Assembly (NCBI GenBank): GCA_965603825.1
Contig: CBFDEM010000037.1
Coordinates: forward strand, 248,001 to 312,000
Direction: 5' to 3'
DNA from: Blepharisma stoltei ATCC 30299
Taxonomy: Eukaryota; Protista; Ciliophora
Length of the DNA: 64,000 nt
In this document: in pieces, positions 29,009 through 49,913 of the stretch
Numbering within the stretch: the first letter of the stretch is position 1
Layout: each line of letters starts with the position of its first letter
Made by a program: the position numbers and the translations under genes
The notes under the pieces: generated by a model
What the model saw: the letters and a program-made list of their open reading frames with translations, nothing else
The model's database searches: none
Told to the model about the DNA's origin: nothing

Positions 29009-29228
29009 AATTATTATCCTTTTTATTTATAAACTTTAATTCATTATAAAAAATTAAAAGTGTTTAAATACTCTTTTTTTCGAATAATAACACTTCAAAT
29101 CACTTATTGGATGAATTCAGAGAGCTTTTTAAAATTATTTTATAAATTTTTTTAAAGTTGATATAATCGCTTTTTGCTCTATATATCATAATGTTCTTTC
29201 CCTTTTGGGCTCCAACCAAAACCAAGCT

Positions 29229-29438
29229 CTAGCTGCAAGAAACATAAAAATAATAGAATCCGCAAATCCACGATGTCAGCTTTACTATCACCATTGCATC
29301 ACCTAAAAGTCTTGAATTACTGCTGTAGCTAGGCCAGGTGCTGCTATAAGTAAAGCTATTAATCCATATAAAGGGTGAAAGAAAATCATAATTATTAATA
29401 TTTCGCATATAGATCATAAAATAGCCAAAATTTCTCAT
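29229..29438 (-). pseudogene. Frameshifted relic of the first FG-GAP repeat of the lectin-like family
   Basis: FLSPFIWINSF..STWPSYSSNSRLLGDA matches the start of the 29497-30726 gene; adding one base near 29295 gives DANGDSKADIV. Confidence 0.75.
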
Positions 29439-29496
29439 AGTTTTTATTACTTAAATGCAATCGTATAGAATAGTTAATTGAGTATTTTAACTTAAT

Positions 29497-30726
29497 TTAA
29501 AGCCTGACATACTCATTTCTTGCTCCTGATATATGAGCGTTCTTTTCTTTTTTAGCTCCAACTATAATCAAGAAAGTTGTAACTCCGATCCCAAGAAGCA
29601 CAAAGAAAGCTAAATACTCAAAAATTCCAGCATAACTGCTTTCTTTAATCATTTTCTGAGCATCTTTTGCGCTGTCCCTAAAACTTTTTTCTCCTACCTC
29701 AAGCAAATTAGGGTTATAATTAGGAAAGATAACAGCTACACGAACTCCTTCCCCTCCAAATCCTATAATATCATTGTATCCATCTCTATTAGCATCTGCC
29801 ATAAATCTTGGCTTCGAATCAAAAGTATCGAAGCCTTCAACCTGGCTATTTCTCCCAAAATAGTACATCAGTCATTCAGGATTATCAAATCCACTCCCAT
29901 TAGAGAGTGAATAACCAGTTGAACTATCTCCAAATCCTATGATGTCTGCTTTTTTATCTCCATTGAGGTCTTTTACAATTCTTGGGTTTTGATTAAAGCT
30001 TTCCCATCCAAAAGACGTCGACCAAAGCGTAGCTTTGTCAAAAGTAACTCCATTTGATAATGCGACCCAAGTTCCTTGAGAATTAAAGCCTACAATGTCA
30101 GCTTTTCCGTCACCATTTACATCAGCAACCATTCTGGGAGTTTGATCATAAGTTGTCCACCCTGCTAACACTGTAAACTCGCTAGAAGCAATTGTTCTGG
30201 TTAAAAATTGATTCCCATTCGATAATGATACATAAACGGAATCATAGCCAAATCCAATGATGTCATCTTTTCCATCTCCATTGAAATCTCCTAAAGCTCT
30301 TGGATATCTGTCAAAACTAGTCCAGCCTCCGTTAGAGTAGGAAAAATCATATATCCAGCGAGTAGCGTCATTTATTCTATAAGCATCAGAAATAGAGACA
30401 TAAACAGCGTCATAGCCGAAACCGACTATATCAGCTATTTTATCACCATTTACATCTCCTAAAAGTCTGGGATATAAATCTTGAGATGTCCAACCTCCAA
30501 CGTTCTTACAGAAAGCACCAAGTGAATTAGTTGGGGCGGTGAAATTACCACCTGTGGAATATGAAACTTTAATCCCGTTATCTGAAAAGCCAACTATATC
30601 AGCTGCGCCGTCACCATTTATGTCACCTACTAGCCTAGGATTACTGTTGAAACTAGGCCAAACGCTGCTGTCATAAAAGCTGCTAACCCATATAATGGGT
30701 GGAAGAAATGTAATCATTATATCCAT
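29497..30726 (-). CDS. PVL-type FG-GAP beta-propeller lectin-like protein with C-terminal TM helix (copy A)
   Basis: Six PRxxxDxNGDxxxDIxGF repeats; TGA 29872 = W joins the ORFs; TM YLAFFVLLGIGVTTFLIIV; tail ends YVRL. Confidence 0.85.
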
Positions 30727-32419
30727 TGAATGCTTGAACAGAAAATGTGGATGTTGATAAAGATGGAATGCTACAAGAGATTGAAAACTAAGCACTAATT
30801 GATGAATATTTTAAGAAAATTTAAAATATATTAACCAGATGTAGTTTAATAATATTTATTATTGAAGGCAGAGTTTAATTCGTAAAGAAAACACTAGAAC
30901 GCAATATAAGCCTGCACCAAATTTAAACAAGAAAGGAACAATTAAAGCATTAATTTCTAAAACATATATCATTTTCAAAATTGGTTAAAAGTTAAACGGG
31001 GTTCGCCTTTGTGATTTTTATGTCTCATAAATTAAATACAGATTAAAAACCATTTTTTATAAACTTTATTGCTCAAGTAAAATAAATGGCACTTATTCGT
31101 GAACTAACTAAAATTTTGTTCTTTGGTTTGAGCAATTGGAACTACTTTATTGCAAATTGGTTAATTTCTGCCAATTTATATTCATCAATAATGATTAAGA
31201 CTTTTTAATTTAAAATAAATGTGCATATATTTTCTTAGCGAACTATATAGAATCTTCTTTTCTAATAAAAATTCATTAGAGGGCTTTAAAAAGTTAGGAT
31301 GCTGCATAAAAGCATTATTTAATGCATTTTAAGAGAGAACAAAGGATATTTTACAAACTATAATCAACAATCTAAGAGTTAAATATAACTATAATAATTT
31401 TGTATAAATAACACTTTTCCATATTCCAAAATTTCTAGCTTATCACTAAATCCAATGTGAGTGATACTTGTCAATAGAAAAATCCTTTATTCGAATATTA
31501 CATTCTTAATTTATTTATAAACTGCATTAGGCGAATTACGCACATTTGGTAATTTTAGGCCACTCTAAAGTAATACTTATTAGGAAAAAATAAAGACCAA
31601 GCTAAGCGTACACTACACAGCGTGAAATTCAGTACATTTTTAAATGGATAAGAAGTTTTTTTAGAACATACAAATTTGGCATGAAAAACCCACAAGTCTT
31701 TTATAGTAAAATTAGCATGTGATATGCAGAGTTTTAGGAGGTTTAGAACAATTATCTCTTAAGCTAAGAGTAGACCAGATATCATTAAAGACTTACTTGA
31801 TTATACAGTCTAATATTCTCGACACAACAGAAATTTTTCATATTTTAACTATAAAATTGAGTCAATAAATTAATTATGAACTGAGTTTAAATAACTAATT
31901 GAGTATGGGCGTTAGTTGATGGATATTTTAAAAGAAAGTAATTTAAGGCTTTCACTTTGCTTATACTTAGTCTACTAATCTTGATAGTTGTTTGTTTATT
32001 TATAAAATCACATACTTGATACTTCACATGCCTAAAGACTGTGGCTTCTCTAATTTTGATAATCTTGAAATGGCTTTTATGATAGGCAATATATTAAGAA
32101 TTGCTTTGATTTTTAAGCCATTTCTTTAAGTTTCTTTTCTATAATAAACCAATAAATGAAAAATTTCAAATAAAACGTTAATTTAAATTGGACCAAAAGT
32201 TCTTAATATTGATAAACTTTTTAGTAATTATCTGTTTTAAATCTCTAAAATCATTATAATTACAAATCAAGAAGAAAACAAAAATAAATATAAGATTTAA
32301 ATGTTTAAGACTTTAATTAACTAATTAGGCGAAGCTATTAAGCTTTTCTTAAAATGTAACAGCTTTTTAAATGCATTTTATATTCCAAAAAATATCAAAA
32401 GTAATAGCTGATTAATTTT

Positions 32420-33544
32420 TTATTTCAAGCTCATATAAGAGCTTGCTGAGCCTTCACAAAATTCAAGATAATAAGGCTTACTTGATTTTTTTTTAAAACA
32501 AATTAAAAGAGCAACACCTAGAACTCCAAATAATAAAATTCAAGCCCAAATCCAATAGAATTTCCCTTCAGAATTTGAGCTATCAAATTTCAAAATACTT
32601 TCACGCGATTCTGCCTTGCATCTATCAAAGCAATTAATTTCTAGTTCATTACTTTCATATTCACTTAAGCACTTTACATCGCTTAATGAGTTATCAGATT
32701 TGATAGCATTCAACTTAGTAATCTTAATATCAGCTATATCATCAACCATTACAGAAACAAATGTTCCAGCATTTCCAAAGCCAATAATATCAAAAAGTCC
32801 ATATCCTGTCACATCCATAACTACTCTTGGGTGTCTATCATATGAATTTCCACCGCCTCCATTACTAACTGCCCCAAAACTAGACATAGCCAAAAAGGGT
32901 TCTTCAAAGTGTTTTCCATTAGAATAAGCTATATAAATCCCTGCTGATCCAAAGCCAATAATATCTGCTTTTCCATCATTGTTCATATCTTTTACAAATC
33001 TTGGAAATTGATCAAAATTTGTCCAGCTTCCAGCATCTGCTGAGCTCCCAAACCACCATGACCATAAGGTAGCTTTATCAAAGTTTACTCCATTCGATAA
33101 AGCAACTACCACACCGTCTGCATTGAATCCAACGATGTCAGCTTTTCCATCACCGTTTACATCCTCAATTCATCTAGGATTCATATTAATGCTTGATCAC
33201 CCATAACTCGATCCAAAATCTGTTGTATAATAGGAAATAGCTTTTGCAAATGAGTTGCCATTTGAGAAAGCAATGTAAATACTGTTGCTGTAAAATGTAA
33301 TGGCATCAGCTTTGCCATCACCGTTTACATCTCCAAGGAATCTTGCACAAGAATCTGAAGAAGATGAACTTGGGCATATAGTTTCCTTACTTCATAATGA
33401 AGAATCTGTAAATCCTGTGGTATTCGAAGTAGATACTAAGATGCCTGCATAGCTGAAGCCGACAATGTCAGCCTTTTTATCTCCATTGACATCGCCTACT
33501 ACAGAATATCTGTATGAATGGATGAATGGCTGCTTGGAGGAATT
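32420..33544 (-). pseudogene. 5'-truncated PVL-type FG-GAP gene (copy B): repeats 2-6, stalk, TM and tail
   Basis: Open frame (4 TGA=W) from TAA 33547-33545 to TAA 32420; homology starts near 33500 (VGDVNGDKKADIVGF); no upstream ATG or first repeat; tail ends YMSLK. Confidence 0.7.
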
Positions 33545-34224
33545 TTAAAGAGAAGATTTTTTATAAAATCTGATAAATAGCTATTTTTTGGCACTTCGCA
33601 CCAAAAGTAGCAGGGAAATCTTCAGCAAGCGATGCTGAGGAGTAGTGAATAAAGGTTTTTTTTTAGAGGCCTGTAGAATTTATGGAATTTCATTGAGATT
33701 TTTCAAGATTCATATGCATGATTACATAAAATCATTATTGATTCTCTTTGGTCCATATCGGATGTGCTATACGCGAATGGGTGCTACATCGAGAAACAAT
33801 TTTTATGCAGCTTGTGAAGTTGGATATTCAGCGGAGGATTGCTGATGTTTGCTAAATATTTAATATTACTTTAAAAAGCCTGCTATATGACTAAAAACTG
33901 TTAAATTTGTTGAAAAAATAATTTCTTTAATATTTGAAAGAATTTCTCGGTTTTTAGAAATCCAATATACAGTATGCTGACTTGGATCCGAAGATCTTTT
34001 TTGTGTCCATAATATTAGATTATATTGTAAGGGCTAAAATTTCTTTCTATCAAATGGTCCCAAAATCTTTTATTAGGTTCTTTAATTGTGAAACCATATG
34101 ATTATAGAAAGCAGCTAAAAATCAGCATTAAGGATACAAGCAGTTTTTACTCTATATTAAAAAAAATACTTATTTTAAACTGTTTAATAGTTTTTTATTT
34201 TAGCCATTTAGATTAGCTTAAATA

Positions 34225-35559
34225 TTAAGCCCTGATATAAGGAGTTTCTGATTCCTCTCCAAAATCATAACGAATTTTCTTGGATTTTCTCATCCCTTTG
34301 AAGTAATTCAACATGATAATTCCAAGAATTGCAAAAGACACAATCCATATCCAAACTCCAAAAGAGCCTACTTCAGACTGCTTAGTATCTCCTATTGCGT
34401 CACAATCACATGTTGCCTTGCATTTATCCAAGCAATTCGATCTCGGGCCATAATCTTTGCATTCACTTGTGCACTTTGCGTCACATGCGGTGCTATTAGC
34501 CTTGATACTCTTTAAGTTAATAGGATTTATAGCATTTGCATCGTTCAGCGATAGAGCAACATGGACTCCTGCAATTCCAAAACCAAAAATGTCATTATTT
34601 CTATCTCCATTTGCATCTCCTATCATTCTTGGATGTCTATCAAACGAATTCCATCCTCCAGCAGCAGCTAATTTCCCATAGTGGAACATCACCAATAAAG
34701 GATAATCAAATCCTTGCCCATTTGAAAGAGCTACATAAATACCTGCTAGCCCAAATCCAACAATGTCAGCTTTTCCATCACCGTTAACATCTCTTACAAA
34801 CCTTGGAAATTGATCGAAACTTGTCCAGTGCCCAGCATCATCAGAATTTCCAAACCATCCTGACCAAAGTGTAGGAGCTAAAAATCCAGTTCCAACTGAT
34901 AACGAAACCCATACTCCAGAACTGTTGAAGCCAATAATGTCAGCTTTCCCATCTCCATTTACATCTCCAGCCCATCTCGGCGTGTCATTAAAGCTTCTCC
35001 ACCCAGAAGCCACAGAAAATTCTGATATTAAATTTTGAGGACTTGCAAATGAGTAGCCTGTTGAATAAGAAATCCAAGTATACTCACCCCCAAAGCCAAT
35101 AATATCAGCTTTACCGTCACCGTTTACATCTCCAAGGCACCTTGGGTATAAATCAAAGCTACTCCAGCCTCCAGCTGCATATGCATAATTTTTGACCCAA
35201 GGTGAAGGCTCTGTGAACCAAGATCCAGTTGATATTGATACCCAAGTGAAATCATGTCCAAATCCAACGATGTCAGCTTTTTTGTCTCCATTGACATCTG
35301 CTACAAATCTTGGGTATTGATTATAGCTGGCCCAACCTCCTGCAGATCTTGCATAATTACTGACCCATCTTTTTGCAATTCCAAGATCTTTTCCGCTTGA
35401 CAAAGAGACGTAAGTTCCATCATTCGCAAAGCCTATTACATCGCTTTTTCCGTCTCCGTCGACATCGCCGACAAGTCTTGGATTCTCATTAAAACTAGAC
35501 CATCCTTGGTCCACACCAAATTGAGAAATCCATAAAGCAGGATACAAAAATTTTAACAT
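34225..35559 (-). CDS. PVL-type FG-GAP beta-propeller lectin-like protein, Cys-rich stalk, TM (copy C)
   Basis: Six repeats, CxxxCxxxC..CxxxCxxxC stalk, TM VWIWIVSFAILGIIML, basic tail. Confidence 0.88.
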   Translation of the reverse strand: MLKFLYPALWISQFGVDQGWSSFNENPRLVGDVDGDGKSDVIGFANDGTYVSLSSGKDLGIAKRWVSNYARSAGGWASYNQYPRFVADVNGDKKADIVGFGHDFTWVSISTGSWFTEPSPWVKNYAYAAGGWSSFDLYPRCLGDVNGDGKADIIGFGGEYTWISYSTGYSFASPQNLISEFSVASGWRSFNDTPRWAGDVNGDGKADIIGFNSSGVWVSLSVGTGFLAPTLWSGWFGNSDDAGHWTSFDQFPRFVRDVNGDGKADIVGFGLAGIYVALSNGQGFDYPLLVMFHYGKLAAAGGWNSFDRHPRMIGDANGDRNNDIFGFGIAGVHVALSLNDANAINPINLKSIKANSTACDAKCTSECKDYGPRSNCLDKCKATCDCDAIGDTKQSEVGSFGVWIWIVSFAILGIIMLNYFKGMRKSKKIRYDFGEESETPYIRA

Positions 35560-35933
35560 TTATAGCCATTAATAATTTTGGTAATAGTTAGGCATTCATT
35601 AGATATAAAATTACTAAATTATAATAAGCTCGACAAATATCCCTTAAAGAGAATAGGCTATATGAGTGTAATTAATTTTCTATTAAAATGGTATATTAAT
35701 ATTAAAATAAAAGTTGGATTTAAAAATTATGCAAAAATTAAAAAATTCATAGATATCGTGAACTATATAATCATAATAAATAAAAATAATTTTTCCGAGT
35801 TTTAACTTTCAATTAGTATACTTTTAAGCACTTTTTATTAAACGGAAGTTTAATTTGAATCAAATTAAACTTAGCTTAATATAATAGCGAAGAGGAATAT
35901 TTTTATTTTAAATGCTGAATTTAGCTTAAATAA

Positions 35934-37268
35934 TTAAGCCCTGATATAAGGAGACTCCAACCCCTCATTCAGGCCAGCATAAATCATCTTCGAATTTTTC
36001 TTCCCTTTTAAGTGGCCCATAATGATTGCTCCAAGAACTACAAAAGACAAAATCCAAGCCCAAACTCCAATAGTTATTGTTTCAGACTGTTTAGTGCAAT
36101 CTTTTACAGAAGATTCACAAAGAGCCTTGCATTCATCCAAACAACTTGATTTTGAGCCAAAGCTCTTGCATTTATTAGCACATTTTGCTTCGCAATCTGT
36201 GCTATTTGCCTTAATACCCTTTAAATTAATAGGAGTTATAACGCTGATATCACTCTGCCCTTGAGCAACGTTGACTCCTAAAATTCCAAAGGCAATAATG
36301 TCGCTAATTTTATCCCCATTCGCATCTCCTACCATTCGTGGATGGTTATCAAATGATTTCCACCCCCCATTAGCATTTCCCTTTCCAGATTTGATGGTTA
36401 TTAAAATAGGGGAGTCAAATCCTTGCCCATTTGAAAGAGCAAAGTAAATTCCTTGTAGCCCAAACCCAACAATGTCAGCTTTTCCATCATGATTAACATC
36501 TTTTACAAATCTTGGAAATTGATCGAAACTTGTCCAGTCCCCAGCATCAGCCGAGTTTCCAAACCACTCTGACCAAAGTGTAGGAGCTAAAAATCCAGTT
36601 CCAACTGATAACGAAACCCATACTCCAGAACTGTTGAAGCCAATAATGTCAGCTTTCCCATCTCCATTTACATCTGCGACCCATCTCGGTGTGTTATTAA
36701 AGCTTCTTCACCCCGAATTTACAGAAAATTCTGATGTTAAATTTTGATGGCTTGAAAATGAACTACCTGTTGAATAAGAAACCCAAGTATACCCAGCACC
36801 AAAGCCAATAATATCATCTTTACCGTCGCCGTTTACATCTCCAAGACACCTTGGATATAAATCAAAACTACTCCAGCCTCCAGCTGCACGTGCAAAATTC
36901 TTGACCCAAATAGAAGGCTCTGAAAATCCTGATCCAGTTGATATTGATACATAAGTGCCTGCATATCCGAATCCAACAATATCTGCCTTTTTATCTCCAT
37001 TGACATCTGCTACAAATCTTGGGTATTGGTCATAGCTGGTCCATCCTCCTGCAGACTTTGCATAATTACTGACCCATCTTTTAGCAGTTCCAAAATCCTC
37101 TCCACTTGACAATGAGGCGTAAGTTCCATCATTTCCAAAGCCTACAATATCGCTTTTTCCATCTCCGTCGACATCGCCGACAAGTCTTGGGTTGTCATTA
37201 AAACTAGACCATCCCTGGTCAACCCCAAATTGAGAAATCCATAAAGCAGGATACAAAAATTTTAACAT
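35934..37268 (-). CDS. PVL-type FG-GAP beta-propeller lectin-like protein (copy D, tandem duplicate of C)
   Basis: Same length as C (1335 nt), offset 1709 bp; its single TGA (36708) aligns with TGG (34999) in C. Confidence 0.88.
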
Positions 37269-38205
37269 TTATAACCATTAATAATTTTGATAAAAATTAG
37301 AGATAATTTAGCAGTAAAAATACTGAATATACAAACTTACTTTTAAGAATATGATCACTTAGGGTAATAAATCTCGCTATTGAAATTGTTTACACAAATA
37401 TTAAATTATAAGTTTGGATTGGTTAAGATATTTTTAATTTCTCATTTATGGTTGAAGATTAATCAAATATTCAGTAAACATTTTTCACTGAAAAATGGAC
37501 TGTTTTTCATATTGAAGAAATCTATTGAAAAATGCATTAACTTTGATAAGCTGCCTTTTATACTTATAAACTAGATTATAAATCGATATTTACATTAGAA
37601 ATTCATTTAAACCACTGCTCTCATGCTTACCACTGTATGACTAATTAAGATAATTTATCTAGCAAGTAAACATTATGGCTAGGCTTACCATTATCTCTTT
37701 TCAATATTAGAAGAGTTTATTACTAGGTTTTGTACACATAGTTAGACAGATTATCATAGGACGAAATAATTAATTCCTTAAGACTGTTATTACTTTCGTT
37801 AATTAGAAGAGACTATTTACTATGCTATAGGAATAAAAAAGCTCAAATTAATAAAGCAAAAAATATAAACTATTTAATAGAATTATTTTAATTCAGTAAA
37901 GGCCTTTTTATACATAAATATTCCAAATATTATATGCCATTATTATCACTTTAATATCATATAGAAACTTTTTATTTTATAAATATTCTAATATAAGAAT
38001 CCTTATATTTCTATCTCAAAAATCCTTTTCTTTCCTCTCTATAATCCATAGATCTAAAATTTTATTTTTCCTTTGCACCTAATTCTTTCCATATTCATTT
38101 TTACTATCCGAATACGTCATATATTTATCTATAAATCCCTTAAAATTCCTTATATCATTTAAATAGTTTCAATAGCTTTGTAATCACTGATCCATTACAA
38201 TAAAT

Positions 38206-39564
38206 ATGCCGATCGACCTAAACAGGCTTAGAACAGAGCGTGGTGGAGACCCTAATGAAGTCAGAAATTCCCAAATTGCTCGCTTCAAAGATGCAGGATT
38301 GGTTGATCGCGTTATTGAGCTTGACCAAGAGTGGCGTCGTGCTAGATTCAACCTTGAGCAGCTCAACAAAGAATTCGGCCAGCTTAACAAAGCAGTCGCT
38401 GAGCGTAAAAAGGCAAACAAAGAAGACCCATGCACTGAAGAAAACGCCAAAAAAGAAGAGCTTGACAAATTAATAGAAGAAGCCAAAGTCAAAGACCAAG
38501 AACTCTTAAACGCTGTTAATGAAGCCAACAACCTAATCGGAAACATTATCCACCCAAGTGTCCCTATTAGTGAGACTGAAGACGACAACAGAGTTGAAAG
38601 AACCTGGGGAGAACCTAACGCTATGGTCATTGACAACACCCCTGGACACTATTTCCATCATGCTGTGCTATCTAGACTTGATGGCTACGACTCAGAAAGG
38701 GGTGTCAAATTAGTAGGGCATAGAGGGTACTTATTAAAAGGAAATGGACTACTATTGAACCAAGCTTTAATTAACTATGGCTTGAACTTCTTAACACAAA
38801 GACAATACACCCTGATACAGCCACCTTTCTTTATGAACAGAAGCATGATGGCTCGTACAGCTGAACTGGCAGACTTCCATGACCAGCTCTATAAGGTGAC
38901 TGGGGAAGAAGGAGAAGAAGGCTTCTACTTGATCGCGACATCAGAGCAGCCTATATCTTGCATGCATCATAAAGAGTGGCTACCAGAAAAAAGCCTTCCT
39001 TTGAGGTACGGTGGGTACTCATCTTGCTTCAGAAGAGAAGCGGGAGCTCATGGAAAAGACACTTGGGGTATTTTCAGAATCCATCAATTCGAAAAAGTTG
39101 AACAGTTCTGCATCACAACTCCAGAAAAGTCTTGGGAAATGCACGAAGAAATGATCGCCACCTGCGAAGAGTTTTACAGAAGCCTTAACCTGCCTTACAG
39201 AGTCATTGCAATCGTTTCCAAAGAACTTAACTTGGCTGCTGCCAAGAAGTACGACTTAGAAGCTTGGTTCCCTGGCTACAAAACTTACAGAGAGCTTGTG
39301 TCTTGTTCCAACTGTACCGATTATCAATCCAGAGCAGTTGAAGTCAGATGTGGAGCCAAGAAACAAAACGAGACTGAAAAGCGCTACGTCCACATGCTTA
39401 ATGCTACTCTTTGTGCTACTGAAAGAACCTTATGTTGCATCCTTGAAAATTACCAAACTGCTGACGGCCTAGTCGTTCCTGAAGTACTTAGACCTTACAT
39501 AGGCGGAAGAGAGTTTCTTCCTTGGGTAAGAGAGCTTACAAAAGAGGAACTTAAGAAATTTTAA
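38206..39564 (+). CDS. SARS1: Cytosolic seryl-tRNA synthetase
   Basis: IGNIIHPSVP, YLIATSEQP, CFRREAG, GIFRIHQFEKVEQF, ELVSCSNCTDYQ, HMLNATLCATER. Confidence 0.97.
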   Translation: MPIDLNRLRTERGGDPNEVRNSQIARFKDAGLVDRVIELDQEWRRARFNLEQLNKEFGQLNKAVAERKKANKEDPCTEENAKKEELDKLIEEAKVKDQELLNAVNEANNLIGNIIHPSVPISETEDDNRVERTWGEPNAMVIDNTPGHYFHHAVLSRLDGYDSERGVKLVGHRGYLLKGNGLLLNQALINYGLNFLTQRQYTLIQPPFFMNRSMMARTAELADFHDQLYKVTGEEGEEGFYLIATSEQPISCMHHKEWLPEKSLPLRYGGYSSCFRREAGAHGKDTWGIFRIHQFEKVEQFCITTPEKSWEMHEEMIATCEEFYRSLNLPYRVIAIVSKELNLAAAKKYDLEAWFPGYKTYRELVSCSNCTDYQSRAVEVRCGAKKQNETEKRYVHMLNATLCATERTLCCILENYQTADGLVVPEVLRPYIGGREFLPWVRELTKEELKKF

Positions 39565-45293: not shown

Positions 45294-45748
45294 TTAAATT
45301 GTAATTTTTCATAGATGAAGATATCGAATTTCAAAGAGAAAATTAAATATTAATAAGAAGTAGAATCAATATTAAGGCTTGGAGAGTCTAATTAATTAAA
45401 AAGCTATTTGATAATTTAAATATATTTTAATACCATGCAATAAAGAGCACAATATAAAATGCTTGAACAAATTAGGTTTTAGGATCTTGGAATCTTAATA
45501 TTAGATGTTAAGTCTTCTATTTAGTTTAAAGTCAGACATTTTTATTATTAATTCTATTAAAAAATTAAGATATGGTGCTTTATATATAATTTTTCTGTTT
45601 AACTATAATTACTTATATTTTACAGGCGCCGTTATTTATATTCGATTTGCAATTGTGATTTACATTTCTGAGTCTAAAATTTTTTTTAAATGATTTTAGT
45701 ACTAGATTTCAGCAGATGATATTCGGGAAAAATGGCATGGAAATTAAT

Positions 45749-47059
45749 ATGGAAAATATCAAATGCTTTTTCTCAGACTGCGCTCTAAAGCCTCAGGGAT
45801 TCTGCGATTGCATGAGCTCTCCAACTCTATTTTGTGAGAGACACTGCTTTGACCACCTTCAAAGATTAGAAGAAAGTCCTCATAATTTTAAAAACCTTTG
45901 ACATTCTCCTTCTGAAGTAACAAGACAAATAATAATACATAAAGCTAATGAGCTAAAGCATAGTATTAAAAACAGCAAAAAATATTTGGTAGATGAGTAT
46001 AAAAAAGTATTTCAGTGTTTGATGGACTACCAAAGCAAATCATTAGCTATTTTAAATGATCTTGAAAAAAAAGCTGATAATTACATCAAAGCAGCATCGT
46101 ATCTTAAAGAGGTCCCAACCTATCCTGAAGCCACTACTTATCAGCTACTTTTAAGATTAAAGCCGGAAGAAGTAACTTATAGATTAAGAGCTTGAGAGAT
46201 TTCTAACGATTGATTGAAAACTCAACATATGATCGATTCAATTAGAGTTTCTTTTGAATGATTTAAAATTAATCCTTTTGTCGAAATTTGTGGTTGCCAA
46301 ACTAACTCTGAAAGCATTTTTTTTATTTGTGGTGATCATGTAAAAGAGTTAAATGAGTATAGGCTTGCTGAAAATAGACTTGTTAAACATCAATTAGATA
46401 TCCATGAAAGCATATGAAACAATACATCAATATGTGCTCTACCAAACCATGATTTGCTTTTTTACGGAAATTGGGTAAACAATGCTCACACTGGCTTTAG
46501 TTTTCTTATAGATAAAGGTAAAAATATCATGAAGCTGCCTACAGGAAAGGCTAATTGCGATTTAAGCTCAGTTTGGTATAATAATCATATTTATTCTTTT
46601 GGAGGTGTGTATGGAGCTTCTGAAAAATTTTGCTTAAAGAAAAACTCTTGAAAATCTTGCTGCAAGCTACCTGAAGGAAATTACCAATTCAGTACTAGTA
46701 TCATTTTTTGTGATATATTGCTATTAACTAGCCTTCGTTGTACAGACTTGATCAAATATAATTTTAAGAAAGACGCCTTTATAAAAATTTCAAATTTAAT
46801 ATTAGCCAAAGAAATTCATAAGAGATTATTTATTGGAAATTCTAGAGCCTATGTTATAGAGACATCTCAAAATATTTATGAAAGTGAAGAGCTAAACCCA
46901 ATGAGATGAAAAAATATTGGGAAGAATAATATTAAAAACGCATGAATTTGGTCTTTTGGGGCCTTTTTTAACGGTAAGTTATGGTTTATAAATTGGGAGT
47001 GCGATTTAATTAAATTCGATTTAGAATCAAAAAAATTGGATTTTGTGAAGAAAGTTTAG
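45749..47059 (+). CDS. B-box-like Zn finger + coiled coil + Kelch-like propeller protein (copy 1)
   Basis: Four track fragments share one frame across about 8 TGA=W; CFFSDC..FCDC..FCERHC..H; IYSFGG. Confidence 0.8.
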
Positions 47060-47272
47060 ATAAACATGTAATTAATTTTTACACAAACATAAAATCCCAA
47101 TATAATCAATCTAATTCTATTAATATTAAACGATATAGACATTAATATTTGATGATATCATTAGGCATGATGAAGGTTATTAAAATTTTAATATTTGTCC
47201 ACTTTTTATTATAGTCACAAAACTAAGAGGGCTTTTAAAAATTCGGGGAAATATGGCAGGATTATTTTTAAG

Positions 47273-48411
47273 ATGGACATTATAAAGTGTTTCATCTCAG
47301 AGTGTATTTTAAAACCTCAAGGATTTTGTGATTGCTTGGGCTATCCAGTGTTATTTTGTGAAACCCATTGCTATAATCATCTTCAAAATATTAAAGAAAG
47401 GCCCCACGAACTTCAAGATCTTTGGCACCTTCCGTACGAAAGTACCAGAAAAGTAATAATAGATGAGGCAAATCAATTAAAAAGAAGTATCAAGGATAGC
47501 AGAAAATATTTAATTTCAGAATTTAATAAAATACTTCACTTATTGGTTGGCTATAAAAATCTATCATTTTCTATCTTGAATAATCTTGAGAAAAAGGCTA
47601 ATGAATTTATTAAAGCAGCTTCATATATAAAAGAAGTCCCAACTTATCCCAAAGTAAAAGACTATCAGCTTCTTTTAAGATTAAAGCTTATTGAAGCAAA
47701 ATATAGAGCAAGAACTTGGAGGATATCCAGCGATTGAATTAAGACGAAAAAGATATTACTTTCTATTAAAAAATCATTTGAATTGTTTAGAATTAATCCA
47801 TTTAAAGAAATTTGCCATCTCTATACTTATTCTGATAGCATTTTTTATTTTTATGGTTATTCAAAAGAGCTTAAAGAGTTTAATTTTATTAGCAAGCAGC
47901 GCAAAGTATATAATCTTGATTTAAGGGAAAACATATGAAATAATATATCTGTGTGCCCTCTTCCTAATGATAGAATATTCTGTTATGGAAATCGCGCTAA
48001 TAATTCGATCACAGGCCTTACGTTTATTATTGAAAAAGATAAAACTATAAGCATGCTACCAGAAGGAAAAGCCAGTTGTGATTCAGGCTCAATACTATAT
48101 AATAATCATATTTATTCTTTTGGAGGAGTTTTAGGAGTTTCAGTAAAATTTTGTTTGAACAAAAATACTTGGAAATCATGCTGTCAACTCCCAAAAGGGA
48201 ATTATAAATAGAAGCATCTCAAAAGATTTATGAAAGCGCAGAGTTTGATCCAACAATATGAAAAGATATTGGAAGGAACTTTATTCAAAATTCCTATATT
48301 TGGTCATTTGGAGTGTATCAAGATAATAAGTTTTGGTTCATAAATTCTGAGACTGAATTAATTAAATTTGATTTCAAAACAAAGCAGCTTGGATATGAAC
48401 GAAACATTTAG
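47273..48411 (+). pseudogene. Zn finger/Kelch-like paralog (copy 2) with a 169-bp frameshifting deletion; premature TAG at 48209
   Basis: Colinear with copies 1 and 3 up to GNYK, then resumes in another frame at EASQKIYES; 1139 nt versus 1308 nt for copy 3. Confidence 0.8.
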
Positions 48412-48605
48412 ATAAATTATTTTCAAAATTTTTGATAATTAACAGAAATGAAACTATTTTGAAATCTATCTGCAAATTTCATAGTCTTTTCTATAATGCT
48501 GGAAGGCAAACTAATCTAGATTAATAAATTAGTAAAAAATTTTAGCTATAAGTCCATGAGAATTCGGTAATTTATTATGTTATAATAGCCATAGAATTAA
48601 TTAAT

Positions 48606-49913
48606 ATGGAAGACATCAGGTGTTTTGATTCAAGTTGTTCTCTAAAGCCTCAAGGATTCTGTGAGTGTTTAAACGAAACTACGCTATTTTGTGAGCGACA
48701 TTGCTTTAGCCACCTTCAAAGTCTCCAAGACACGAATCATAAGCTTCAAGATCTTTGGCATTCTCCATACGAAGAAACTCGACAAACAGTAATAAATGAA
48801 GCCCACAAGCTTAAAAAAGACATAAAAACTAGTAAAAAATACTTGATTGAAGAATATAACAAAATATTTCACTGTCTAAATGAATATAAAAACAATTCAT
48901 TTTCAATCTTAAACAGTGTGGAGAAAAAGGCAAATGAGCTAATCAAAGCCGCATCCTATATAAAAGAAGTTCCAACATATCCTAAAGTCAATGATTATCA
49001 GCTTATTTTAAGACTGAAACCTGCTGAAGCAAAGTATAGAGCAAGAACTTGAAGGATAAGAAATCATTGAATCAGAACTATTGCCATTATAGATGTCATC
49101 AAAAATTCATTTAAATTGACAAATATAAGTCCATTTCAAGAAATCTGTGGATTTTACAATTATACAGAGAACATATTCTACTTTGGAGACCATACCAAGG
49201 AGCTTAAAGAATATAATCTTGCTAATAGAAAACTTATAAAGACCGTTTTAAATATAAAAGAAACACTATGGAACAATATATCAGTATGCTACCTTCCAGA
49301 TGGAAGCATATTTTGCTATGGAAATTGATTAAATAATGTTGTGAATGGAACTACATTCATAGTTGATAAAGGAAAAAAAGTAGTGGAGCTGCCTGCAGGT
49401 AAAAGCAACTGTGATTTAAGCTCAGTTTTGTATAATGATCATGTTTACTGCTTAGGAGGAGTGTCTGGAGTGTCAGAAAAATTCTGTTTAAAGAAAAAAA
49501 CTTGAAAATCTCTTTGCCCTCTTCCTGGTGGAAATTATCAATATAGTACGAGCTTTATTTTTTGTGATATTTTATTATTAACAAGTCTGCGCTCTAATGC
49601 TTTATGGAAATATGATATCAATAAAAACACTTTTAAGCAGATTCAAGGCCTTGAATTAGCACGCGATTTTTACAAAAGAGGATTTGCTGGAAATATAAGA
49701 GCCTATATTATTGAAACCTCACAAAAAATATATGAAAGTGAAGAATTAAATCCATTGAATTGGAAAATTATTGGAAGCAATGCAGTTAGCAATTCATATA
49801 TTTGATCATTTGGGGCTTATTATGATAGTAATTTGTGGTTTATCAATTCCAAAAGCGAGCTCATTATGTTTGGCCTTGAGTCCAAAAAATTTGAATTAAT
49901 TAGAAAAATTTAA
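48606..49913 (+). CDS. Zn finger + coiled coil + Kelch-like propeller protein (copy 3)
   Basis: Intact frame with TGA=W; colinear with copy 1. Confidence 0.8.

What the first reader, a model, noticed from the sequence alone, without database searches (positions are those of the whole stretch)
29229..37268. Tandem array of membrane-anchored PVL-type beta-propeller lectin-like receptors
Seen: five same-strand members (relic, intact, 5'-truncated, two intact). Intact copies have six GW-x5-PR-x3-D-x-N-G-D-x3-D-I-x-G-F repeats, then an optional Cys-rich stalk, one TM helix, a Lys-rich juxtamembrane stretch and a short Tyr-containing tail. Known: this repeat is the signature of the integrin-like Psathyrella velutina lectin (PVL)/AAL2 family, soluble GlcNAc/Neu5Ac-binding propellers, with similar FG-GAP/VCBS repeats in bacteria. 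Inference: the propeller has been converted into a surface receptor family evolving by birth and death. It could serve glycan-based prey, self or mate recognition in a phagotrophic ciliate. This is the best candidate for an undescribed system in the window.
Basis: partly seen in the sequence, partly recalled or inferred. Interest (0 to 1): 0.85.

Follow-up and report, generated by a model that had tools for sequence, protein, structure and literature searches.

The report
Membrane-anchored PVL-type propeller genes in Blepharisma
A ciliate genome carries a small, expressed tandem family of single-pass membrane proteins whose outer domain is a six-bladed, calcium-loop propeller related to bacterial and mushroom GlcNAc lectins. 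This domain combination appears not to have been described, and its ligand is untested.

Summary
On the minus strand lie a frameshifted relic (about 29218-29393), an intact gene B (29497-30726), a 5'-truncated gene C (32420-33541), and intact genes D (34225-35559) and E (35934-37268).

The genome reads TGA as Trp. All six in-frame TGAs fall on conserved Trp positions, which fits Blepharisma stoltei.

D matches the solved lectins PVL, AAL2 and PAL (E 7e-63 by sequence, about 1e-28 by fold). It is modelled with high confidence as six blades, not seven. After the propeller come a Cys-rich helical hairpin, one strong TM helix and a basic tail that ends in a Tyr motif.

The hairpin-TM-tail module was found only in Blepharisma. 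It also occurs in two non-propeller proteins that have clear signal peptides.

C, D and E are covered by contigs of runs that look like RNA. B, C and D have transcribed B. japonicum orthologues, and D versus its orthologue gives dN/dS 0.16. A decayed copy on another contig matches an intact B. japonicum paralogue, which supports birth-and-death turnover.

The ciliate clade is separate from the fungal lectins (AU p 1.3e-5) and sits among bacterial proteins.

Caveats:
- No pocket keeps the full AAL2 GlcNAc triad.
- The N-terminal signal peptide is only marginal.
- Ligand and location are untested.

The parts
29218..29393 (-). Relic A. It keeps an N-terminal hydrophobic segment plus the start of blade 1. 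A frameshift then leads into a Ca-loop remnant (NGDSKADIV) and a possible TM/tail remnant. Most of the propeller is deleted.
   Evidence: Local tblastn with code 4: 62% identity to B residues 7-35 at 29298-29384, and D residues 193-226 at 29218-29310 in another frame. Three-frame translation.
29497..30726 (-). Gene B, 409 aa. It has six blades, no Cys stalk, a TM helix at about residues 372-390 and a tail ending NEYVRL. One in-frame TGA (Trp) lies at 29872-29874.
   Evidence: ORF with table 4. It equals database protein P0080. A B. japonicum-type transcript orthologue, P0130, is 79% identical and has an identical C-terminus.
32420..33541 (-). Gene C, 5'-truncated in this assembly. The open frame is 373 aa with four in-frame TGAs, and there is no ATG before 33184. 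Blades 2-3 are degraded, blades 4-6 are kept, three stalk Cys are lost, and the TM and tail are present.
   Evidence: Contigs of the four runs cover 32408-33833. The B. japonicum orthologue fragment P0125 is 78% identical and keeps the stalk Cys.
33501..33502 (-). Breakpoint of the C truncation. Contigs in runs X1 and X3 leave the reference here and continue with sequence that encodes an intact blade-2 motif (FTSQTLYPRIVGDVNGDKK). In X3 the contig runs on for 194 nt, then 42 nt resembling E's 5' end. A full-length C form therefore exists in the sampled material.
   Evidence: tables 5, 7 and 8. Translation of the 30-letter loose end joined to the reference. The last shared bases are TA.
34225..35559 (-). 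Gene D, 444 aa with no in-frame TGA. It is the reference member and has the deepest contigs.
   Evidence: It equals NCBI/UniRef protein P0128. Against the B. japonicum orthologue (L009) it is 88% identical with dN/dS 0.16.
35515..35559 (-). D residues 1-15 (MLKFLYPALWISQFG). This is a candidate signal peptide that is homologous to a blade D-strand.
   Evidence: It is more hydrophobic than every internal equivalent segment (0.94 against at most 0.56; in B 1.61 against at most 0.28). It is 100% conserved in D, E and the B. japonicum orthologue. AlphaFold2 places residues 8-11 as the closing strand of blade 6.
34540..35514 (-). D residues 16-340: a six-bladed propeller with a DxNGDxxxD Ca-type loop in every blade.
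   Evidence: AlphaFold2 pLDDT is above 90 throughout, with 24 strands in six blades. Foldseek gives AAL2 at E 2.6e-28 and PVL at E 6.5e-27. Blade alignment.
34378..34539 (-). D residues 341-394: linker with a conserved NST sequon, then a Cys-rich stalk (CX3CX3C ... CX3CX3CXC) modelled as two helices.
   Evidence: The module is shared with L005 and L008, and in 1.84 billion cluster representatives it appears only in Blepharisma proteins.
34228..34377 (-). D residues 395-444: a TM helix (about 395-418) and a basic cytoplasmic tail ending PYIRA.
   Evidence: Kyte-Doolittle maximum 2.29. AlphaFold2 helix at 400-422. Lys/Arg cluster after the TM.
35934..37268 (-). Gene E, 444 aa. It is a paralogue of D at 75% amino-acid identity, with one in-frame TGA (Trp) at 36708-36710.
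   Evidence: Patchy, low-depth contigs cover 35928-37023. D-E dN/dS is 0.36.

Best explanation
This is a Blepharisma-restricted family of single-pass membrane proteins.

Shown:
- Each intact member has a six-bladed beta-propeller of the PVL/VCBS (FG-GAP_3) kind, with a Ca-type DxNGDxxxD loop in every blade.
- After the propeller come a linker, a disulfide-type Cys helical hairpin (lost in B), one TM helix and a 19-27 residue basic tail with a Tyr motif near the C-terminus.
- The hairpin-TM-tail module is a Blepharisma-specific anchor. It also occurs in two non-propeller proteins that have classical signal peptides.
- The family arose once, duplicated before the B. stoltei / B. japonicum split, and has since gained and lost copies.

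Inferred:
- The propeller came from a bacterial-type secreted propeller, a separate origin from the mushroom lectins.
- The proteins are type I: the propeller faces outside or into a lumen, and the hydrophobic N-terminal 15 residues act as a signal peptide.
- The six non-equivalent inter-blade pockets bind a repeated extracellular ligand, most likely a glycan but not necessarily GlcNAc.
- The Tyr-based tail (YVRL, YMSL, YIRA) mediates adaptor-dependent sorting, so the proteins would act as binding or uptake receptors rather than signalling receptors.
For: - Homology and fold. PVL E 7e-63, AAL2 1e-61, PAL 1.5e-58. FG-GAP_3 and FG-GAP score above their Pfam cut-offs. The AlphaFold2 model has pLDDT above 90 for residues 1-340 and six blades. 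Foldseek's best hits are AAL2, PVL and PAL at E about 1e-28.
- Membrane anchor. There is one segment with a Kyte-Doolittle score of 2.3-2.6 near the C-terminus, followed by Lys/Arg.
- Orientation. The same hairpin-TM-tail module follows clear signal peptides in L005 and L008. An N-x-S/T sequon is conserved before the stalk. The N-terminal segment is more hydrophobic than all of its internal homologues.
- Real, functional ciliate genes. All six in-frame TGAs fall at conserved Trp positions. Contigs of four runs cover only the genic parts of C, D and E and none of four intergenic stretches. B. japonicum MMETSP1395-type transcripts exist for the B, C and D orthologues and for a further paralogue. 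dN/dS for D versus its orthologue is 0.16 in the propeller, 0.13 in the stalk and 0.14 in the TM.
- Origin. The six Blepharisma sequences are monophyletic (98*). Forcing them into one clade with the fungal proteins is rejected (delta lnL 107, p-AU 1.3e-5). The top hits outside the genus are bacterial or metagenomic at 44-51% identity. Some are fused to chitinases, M23 or C1A peptidases, or ricin-B lectin domains.
- Restriction. The own genome has only this cluster plus one decayed copy. The anchor module has 6 significant relatives in 1.84 billion representatives. All six look like Blepharisma proteins and two are labelled B. japonicum.
Against: - The signal peptide is marginal. Its hydrophobic core is 8 residues in D and E. 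AlphaFold2 models residues 8-11 as the closing strand of blade 6 at pLDDT about 91. That placement may only reflect homology to blade D-strands. No dedicated signal-peptide predictor was available.
- No pocket keeps the complete AAL2 triad. The Asn/Asp is kept only in pockets 2 and 3 of D and E, and the His only in pocket 6. Every blade carries a one-residue insertion after the GW. Sugar binding is therefore inferred from family habit, not from conserved contact residues.
- The tail has no recognisable signalling domain, and the Tyr motifs are short enough to occur by chance.
- The runs are contigs with kind 'RNA?' (a guess), so expression level and transcript ends are not measured.
- B was not covered by the read layout.
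- Deep nodes of the tree are unresolved, so no donor can be named. Absence from other ciliates is judged only from the best 120 hits of two searches.
Confidence: 0.6

Rival explanations
1. Tail-anchored cytosolic propellers. There is no signal peptide. The propeller stays in the cytosol, as the fungal lectins do, and the C-terminal TM helix, 19-27 residues from the end, inserts post-translationally into an organelle or the plasma membrane.
For: AlphaFold2 integrates the N-terminus into blade 6 at high confidence. The N-terminal hydrophobic core is short in D and E. The TM helix lies within about 27 residues of the C-terminus. From my own knowledge, fungal fruiting-body lectins such as PVL lack signal peptides.
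Against: The Lys/Arg cluster follows the TM helix, so the positive-inside rule puts the tail in the cytosol. The Cys hairpin next to the TM is the same module that sits behind classical signal peptides in L005 and L008. A six- to seven-Cys CX3C hairpin and a conserved N-glycosylation sequon fit an oxidising, luminal side. A highly charged 26-residue tail is a poor substrate for tail-anchor insertion (inference).
Confidence: 0.2
2. Same topology, but not a lectin. The propeller would be a Ca-dependent protein-binding or adhesion head, integrin-alpha-like in logic. It could act in cell-cell pairing at conjugation or in attachment, and sugar binding would have been lost.
For: The Ca-type loop is kept in 6 of 6 blades, while the GlcNAc triad is incomplete in all pockets. 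The propeller-stalk-TM-short-tail layout parallels integrin alpha, and integrin alpha chains appear among the fold hits at E about 1e-6.
Against: The GW/GGW pocket motif and an aromatic residue at the His position are still conserved blade by blade across paralogues and species. The nearest bacterial relatives are fused to chitinases and cell-wall hydrolases, which points to glycan targeting. Sequence similarity to integrins is not significant (E 0.75). No beta-subunit partner was sought.
Confidence: 0.15
3. A decaying array with no present function: an old acquisition now eroding into pseudogenes.
For: Relic A, the truncated C with lost stalk Cys, and the frameshifted copy on contig C11 all show decay. 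C has a higher dN/dS against D and E, 0.44-0.49.
Against: B, D and E are intact. D versus its orthologue gives dN/dS 0.16 across all regions. B's orthologue is 79% identical with an identical C-terminus. C, D and E are covered by contigs of RNA-like runs.
Confidence: 0.03
4. Bacterial contamination or misassembly inserted into the ciliate contig.
For: The nearest non-Blepharisma relatives are bacterial.
Against: The genes use TGA as Trp at conserved Trp positions. The region has 31-35% GC like its surroundings. It lies inside a 759-kb contig between ordinary ciliate genes. The genes carry a Blepharisma-specific anchor module and have orthologues in an independent B. japonicum transcriptome.
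Confidence: 0.01

Closest known systems
Fungal PVL / AAL2 / PAL lectins (PDB 2BWR, 2BWM, 4TQJ, 5MB4)
   Same: They are homologous by sequence (E 7e-63 to 1.5e-58) and are the best structural match (Foldseek E about 1e-28, 32-38% identity). They share the W-motif blade with GW in the connecting loop, the DxDxDG-type Ca loop and the GFG 2-3 loop (PMC4483166, PMC8023676).
   Different: The fungal lectins are seven-bladed, soluble and without TM. Six of their seven pockets are near-identical and use Asn/Asp104, Trp112 and His117 to bind GlcNAc (PMC4483166). The Blepharisma proteins have six blades, a one-residue insertion after the GW, six non-equivalent pockets with none keeping the full triad, and a stalk, TM helix and tail. 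They are also a separate clade (AU p 1.3e-5).
Bacterial secreted VCBS / FG-GAP_3 'PVL-like' propellers
   Same: These are the nearest relatives outside the genus at 44-51% identity. They share the blade consensus and the Ca loop in every blade. They are extracytoplasmic, and the examples read have signal peptides.
   Different: The bacterial proteins keep the canonical N-F-G-Y-x-A-G-G-W-R-V-D-x-H-P-R pocket motif. The examples counted have seven blades. They stand alone or are fused to enzymes such as GH18 chitinase, M23, C1A, astacin or ricin-B. Among the best 120 hits, only the Blepharisma proteins and one bacterial protein (P0119) have a hydrophobic C-terminal segment.
Integrin alpha subunits
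   Same: The overall logic is the same: an FG-GAP-type Ca-binding propeller head, a stalk, a single TM helix and a short basic cytoplasmic tail. Integrin alpha chains appear among the fold hits (E about 1e-6, TM about 0.4). PVL itself was described as integrin-like (PMC8023676).
   Different: There is no significant sequence similarity (E 0.75). Integrins have seven blades, thigh and calf domains instead of a Cys hairpin, and work as heterodimers with a beta subunit. No such partner was looked for here. The resemblance is convergent architecture, not membership.
Blepharisma L005 / L008 proteins (G000 C33:609422-609724 and C50:54022-54318)
   Same: They share the Cys hairpin, the TM helix (SFGVWAW... 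type) and the basic tail with a Tyr motif (33% identity over the module).
   Different: They have no propeller. Instead they carry a classical signal peptide, a second N-terminal Cys hairpin and a long acidic, Thr-rich region.

Membership tests
PVL/AAL2 fungal lectin family | Significant sequence homology to PVL, AAL2 and PAL | tested here: met
   phmmer against PDB: 2bwm E 7.1e-63, 4tqj 1.2e-61, 5mb4 1.5e-58.
PVL/AAL2 fungal lectin family | Beta-propeller fold built of W-motif blades | tested here: met
   AlphaFold2 pLDDT above 90 over residues 1-340. Foldseek top seven hits are AAL2, PVL and PAL, E 2.6e-28 to 1.1e-25.
PVL/AAL2 fungal lectin family | Seven blades | tested here: not met
   Six repeats by motif and six four-stranded blades in the model, the last closed by the N-terminal strand.
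PVL/AAL2 fungal lectin family | GlcNAc pocket residues: Asn/Asp at W-8, GGW, and His at W+5 (AAL2 Asn104, Trp112, His117; PMC4483166) | tested here: not met
   Blade alignment. In D and E, Asn plus GGW occurs only in pockets 2 and 3, where His is replaced by Tyr. His occurs only in pocket 6, where Asn is replaced by His or Lys. All blades have a one-residue insertion between W and PR. Trp itself is conserved.
PVL/AAL2 fungal lectin family | Placement inside the fungal clade | tested here: not met
   The Blepharisma clade (98*) is separate. Holding it with the two Candolleomyces proteins costs 107 lnL units, p-AU 1.3e-5 (first tree).
PVL/AAL2 fungal lectin family | Soluble protein without a membrane anchor | tested here: not met
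   One C-terminal TM segment, Kyte-Doolittle 2.3-2.6, and an AlphaFold2 helix at 400-422.
PVL/AAL2 fungal lectin family | Binding of terminal GlcNAc (and Neu5Ac for PVL) | not testable with these tools
   Needs recombinant protein and a glycan array.
VCBS / FG-GAP_3 propeller superfamily (PF13517, PF01839) | Pfam match above the gathering score | tested here: met
   FG-GAP_3 53.7 bits (cut-off 26.9, 5 stretches); FG-GAP 51.6 bits (cut-off 22.1).
VCBS / FG-GAP_3 propeller superfamily (PF13517, PF01839) | DxDxDG-type Ca-binding loop between strands A and B (PMC8023676) | tested here: met
   The D-x-[ND]-G-D-x3-D motif is present in 6 of 6 blades of B, D and E. Metal binding itself was not tested.
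Type I single-pass membrane protein | Single TM helix with a positive-inside tail | tested here: met
   Lys/Arg-rich stretch directly after the TM helix in B, C, D and E.
Type I single-pass membrane protein | Cleavable N-terminal signal peptide | tested here: inconclusive
   Residues 1-15 are hydrophobic (KD 0.94 in D and E, 1.61 in B), more so than the homologous internal segments, and fully conserved. The core is short and AlphaFold2 uses it as a blade strand. No upstream exon is seen in contigs from either species. No signal-peptide predictor was available.
Integrin alpha | Significant sequence similarity, seven FG-GAP blades, thigh/calf legs, beta-subunit partner | tested here: not met
   Integrin alpha-E E 0.75. 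Six blades and a Cys-hairpin stalk. A partner was not sought.

The most novel reading that the evidence does not exclude
The family is a convergently built, integrin-alpha-like, Ca-dependent recognition receptor of Blepharisma that takes part in mating. It could be the still-unidentified receptor for the glycoprotein pheromone gamone 1, or an adhesin for pair formation. Its birth-and-death turnover between B. stoltei and B. japonicum would then contribute to species-specific recognition. The gamone 1 receptor is described only as 'putative' in PMC10892320. Gamone 1 carries N-linked glycans that bind ConA but not WGA. That would fit a propeller whose pockets no longer have the GlcNAc triad.
Probability: 0.05. 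Interest if true: 0.85.

Novelty: new variant of a known kind. Interest (0 to 1): 0.5.

Why it matters
PVL-type propellers are known as soluble mushroom lectins, used as probes for terminal GlcNAc, and as modules of secreted bacterial enzymes. Here the same propeller is reduced to six blades, has remodelled pockets, and is mounted on a lineage-specific stalk-TM-tail anchor in a ciliate. It has expanded in tandem and is under purifying selection.

If confirmed, this would be:
- a clear case of a bacterial-type binding module recruited into a eukaryotic surface-receptor scaffold;
- a natural six-blade variant for lectin engineering;
- a concrete candidate for the poorly known recognition molecules of heterotrich ciliates, in feeding, cyst wall or mating.

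It is not a new fold or a new principle.

Tried and rejected
- **Ciliate code 6 (TAA/TAG = Gln).** Rejected. The propellers contain no TAA or TAG and end at TAA, while TGA sits at conserved Trp positions.
- **An upstream exon supplying a classical signal peptide.** There are no joints in the contigs over D and E. Contigs from both species start within a few bases of the ATG. The upstream frames are closed.
- **Other relics inside the window** (30727-32419, 33542-34224, 37269 onward). None found at E up to 1.
- **Word-index search with the stalk-TM-tail region.** It returned only P0001. The exhaustive profile search was needed to find six relatives.
- **The look-up of encoding contigs for P0125 and P0123.** Not on record.
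- **Pfam scan of L005, L008 and the D tail.** Not repeated, and pieces were used elsewhere.
- **AU test on the 123-row tree.** Killed by the sandbox. Repeated on 44 rows with LG+G4.
- **C in the first tree.** It fell on a long branch away from its paralogues. I take this as an artefact of truncation and blade shift, because its blades 4-6, TM and orthologue P0125 are clearly of this family. C was left out of the second tree.
- **Blade counts by regular expression among the hits**. Too crude to say how common six-bladed relatives are.
- **Scan findings.** The word search gave nothing.

- Proteins with in-frame TGA were never passed by reference as one piece. E and C were given as pieces.
- The single read layout used 5951 letters.
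- No spliced model was needed.

Full report
**Genetic code and organism.** The window is AT-rich, 29-40% GC. Translating with the ciliate code 6 gave long frames. Marking each stop codon showed that the propeller-coding parts contain no TAA or TAG and that the genes end at TAA. TGA occurs in-frame at positions where the paralogues have Trp. With code 4 the whole window resolves into closely packed ORFs. All six in-frame TGAs of this family lie in conserved Trp contexts such as NSG-W-RSF, NPR-W-IED and SYG-W-SSI. The assembly has 41.46 Mb in 64 contigs, and the window is C37:248001-312000. This matches the published Blepharisma stoltei ATCC 30299 macronuclear genome: 41 Mbp, 66% AT, UGA read as Trp, tiny introns (PMC9942806). 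I take the host to be that species or a very close relative.

**Checking the observation.** All members lie on the minus strand.
- B is 29497-30726 (409 aa).
- D is 34225-35559 (444 aa).
- E is 35934-37268 (444 aa).
- These three are complete ORFs.
- C is open from 33541 to 32420 (373 aa). It has no in-frame ATG before 33184, lacks the N-terminus and blade 1, and has degraded blade 2-3 motifs.
- Relic A (about 29218-29393) keeps an N-terminal segment 62% identical to B residues 7-35. It then shifts frame into a Ca-loop remnant and a possible TM/tail remnant.
- No further relic lies in the window.

The stalk, TM helix, Lys-rich stretch and Tyr tail are as described.

**What the proteins are.** D matches Pfam FG-GAP_3 and FG-GAP above their cut-offs. 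It matches the solved lectins PVL, AAL2 and PAL at E 7e-63 to 1.5e-58. An AlphaFold2 model built on 58 aligned homologues has pLDDT above 90 for residues 1-340. The model shows six four-stranded blades. The last blade is closed by the N-terminal strand, residues 8-11. After the propeller come two helices (357-366, 376-384) that carry the CX3CX3C ... CX3CX3CXC cysteines, and then a TM helix (400-422). Foldseek ranks AAL2, PVL and PAL first (E about 1e-28). Lower hits are UmbA4, the TcB propellers and integrin alpha chains.

**Sugar pocket.** In AAL2 each GlcNAc is held by Asn/Asp104, Trp112 and His117, plus main-chain atoms of the GG before the Trp and of the 2-3 loop. Mutating the Asn counterparts abolishes binding (PMC4483166). 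A blade-by-blade alignment shows that fungal and bacterial relatives keep [ND]-[FY]-G-x-x-A-G-G-W-R-x-D-x-H-P-R. Every Blepharisma blade instead reads W-x-[ST]-[FY]-[DN]-x-x-P-R, with one extra residue. In D and E the pockets differ as follows:
- The Asn is present only before blades 2 and 3.
- The His position is N, Y, Y, T, F and H in blades 1 to 6.
- The spacer before the Trp varies from -1 to +2 residues.

No pocket has the full triad, so the six pockets are non-equivalent. The blade-specific versions are conserved between D, E, the B. japonicum orthologue and partly C, which suggests constraint rather than decay. The Ca-type loop D-x-N-G-D-x3-D is intact in all six blades. The family is therefore PVL-like by descent and fold, but GlcNAc/Neu5Ac specificity cannot be transferred to it.

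**The anchor and the topology.** Within the genome, D residues 343-438 also match two other ORFs, on C33 and C50. Those proteins start with classical signal peptides. They carry an N-terminal Cys hairpin and an acidic, Thr-rich region, and they end with the same hairpin, a TM helix of the SFGVWAW type and a basic tail ending SSASYKILV. A profile of this module, searched against 1.84 billion cluster representatives, found six significant relatives. All six look like Blepharisma proteins and two are labelled B. japonicum MMETSP1395. A word-index search had found only the D orthologue.

The anchor is thus a genus-specific module that normally sits behind a signal peptide. Together with the Lys/Arg cluster after the TM helix and a conserved NST/NTS sequon before the stalk, this argues for an N-out, C-in orientation.

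The weak point is the signal peptide. The N-terminus (MLKFLYPALWISQFG in D and E) is homologous to a blade D-strand. Its hydrophobic core is only 8 residues, and AlphaFold2 uses it to close the propeller. On the other side, it is more hydrophobic than every internal equivalent and is 100% conserved. No upstream exon appears in contigs of either species. I put type I topology at about 70%.

**Expression and selection.** Four runs of one study were found. They are coded, dated 2022, hold about 30 Mb of contigs each, and their kind is only guessed as RNA. They hold about half of the words of the D-E stretch. Laid on 31500-37450, their contigs cover C (32408-33833), D (34192-35524, the deepest) and E (35928-37023, patchy). 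They leave 31500-32295, 33888-34086, 35679-35877 and 37271-37450 empty, and they show no joints inside D or E. This gene-only pattern is what RNA gives. Because these are contigs, levels and transcript ends are not measured, and B was outside the stretch.

Independent support comes from a JGI copy of a transcript contig (L009). It encodes the D orthologue at 88% identity with a TGA Trp codon inside. Its cluster also holds an MMETSP transcript, and related clusters carry the label B. japonicum MMETSP1395.

| Comparison | dN/dS |
|---|---|
| D vs orthologue, overall | 0.16 |
| D vs orthologue, propeller | 0.16 |
| D vs orthologue, stalk | 0.13 |
| D vs orthologue, TM | 0.14 |
| D vs E | 0.36 |
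| C vs D or E | 0.44-0.49 |

B has a 79% identical orthologue with the same stalk-less linker and an identical ...NEYVRL end.

**Birth and death.** There are four lines of evidence.
- Relic A.
- C is truncated in this assembly and has lost three stalk Cys that its B. japonicum orthologue keeps (78% identity).
- Contigs in runs X1 and X3 leave the reference exactly at 33501. They continue with sequence that restores a canonical blade-2 motif (FTSQTLYPRIVGDVNGDKK). In X3 the contig runs on for 194 nt, then 42 nt about 88% like E's 5' end. A full-length C form therefore exists in the sampled cells. The published time course mixed strains ATCC 30299 and HT-IV. A strain difference is therefore the simplest reading, though it is an inference. 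The break abuts a TA, which is weak evidence for an excision-type event.
- The only other copy in the genome, on C11, is frameshifted and internally deleted. Its best match is an intact, transcribed 438-aa B. japonicum paralogue, P0127.

**Origin.** In a 123-row tree, B, D, E and the D orthologue form one clade (99*). It lies on an unresolved bacterial backbone. The two Candolleomyces (Psathyrellaceae) proteins nest elsewhere, next to actinobacterial-type sequences. In a 44-row tree the six Blepharisma sequences are monophyletic (98*), and a Blepharisma-plus-fungi clade is rejected (p-AU 1.3e-5). One caveat is that I named this group after seeing the first tree.

The best non-Blepharisma hits are bacterial or metagenomic at 44-51% identity. 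Many are fused to GH18 chitinases, M23, C1A or astacin peptidases, or ricin-B domains. This agrees with the published view that eukaryotic PVLs are satellites of prokaryotic clusters (PMC8023676). A bacterial-type origin independent of the mushroom lectins is likely. The donor is unresolved, and absence from other ciliates was judged only from the top 120 hits of two searches.

**Mechanism and verdict.** The most likely reading, at about 0.6, is a type I binding or uptake receptor. A Ca-loaded six-blade head with six different pockets would present multivalent binding to a repeated extracellular ligand, probably a glycan. The head is held off the membrane by a disulfide hairpin. A Tyr-based tail (YVRL, YMSL, YIRA; YKIL in the sister proteins) would sort the protein.
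- Shown: fold, blade number, anchor, transcription, selection, turnover, and separation from the fungal clade.
- Inferred: orientation, ligand class, and sorting role.

No paper in the searched library links FG-GAP or PVL-type proteins with ciliates, or lectins with Blepharisma receptors. I rate this a new variant of a known kind with moderate interest.

Noticed in passing
L006:1098-2090 (about G000 C11:168180-169172, + strand): A frameshifted, internally deleted copy of the family on another contig. Its collinear pieces match B. japonicum P0127 residues 6-26, 28-77, 191-336, 335-357 and 377-437 in three frames at 42-71% identity. P0127 is an intact 438-aa transcribed paralogue, so this member appears to have been lost in the window's species.
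   Followed up: partly
L005:613-1821 (+) and L008:1474-2550 (-), i.e. G000 C33 near 609422 and C50 near 54022: Two paralogous membrane proteins, apparently restricted to Blepharisma. Each has a classical signal peptide, an N-terminal CX3CX3C hairpin, a long acidic Thr-rich region, a second hairpin, a TM helix and a tail ending SSASYKILV. They share the anchor module with the propeller family. Their function is unknown.
   Followed up: partly
window 32765-33500: Contigs over C differ from the reference at about 1-2% of positions (for example 14 in 692). Most contigs over D differ at 0-2 positions in 500-775. This points to a second allele or strain of C in the sampled material.
   Followed up: partly
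window 35415-35494: One contig of run X3 over the 5' end of D carries nine clustered differences. Five of them equal the homologous base of E. This could be another allele, a chimeric contig, or gene conversion between D and E.
   Followed up: partly
window 45716-49913 (+): Three tandem paralogous ORFs (447, 312 and 435 aa) start with a conserved Cys/His-rich motif of the type ...KCF.S.C.LKPQGFC.C. The middle one is shorter. The scan's own note s1-634371 reports an IES-like, TA-bounded deletion there.
   Followed up: no
window 38206-39564 (+): The ORF directly downstream of the array looks like a seryl-tRNA synthetase, judged by eye from its N-terminal sequence. It is an ordinary housekeeping neighbour.
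   Followed up: no
window 30727-32419: A 1.7-kb stretch between B and C has no ORF of 120 aa or more and no recognisable relic. No contig covers the part that was laid (31500-32400). This is unusually long for an intergenic region in this gene-dense window.
   Followed up: partly
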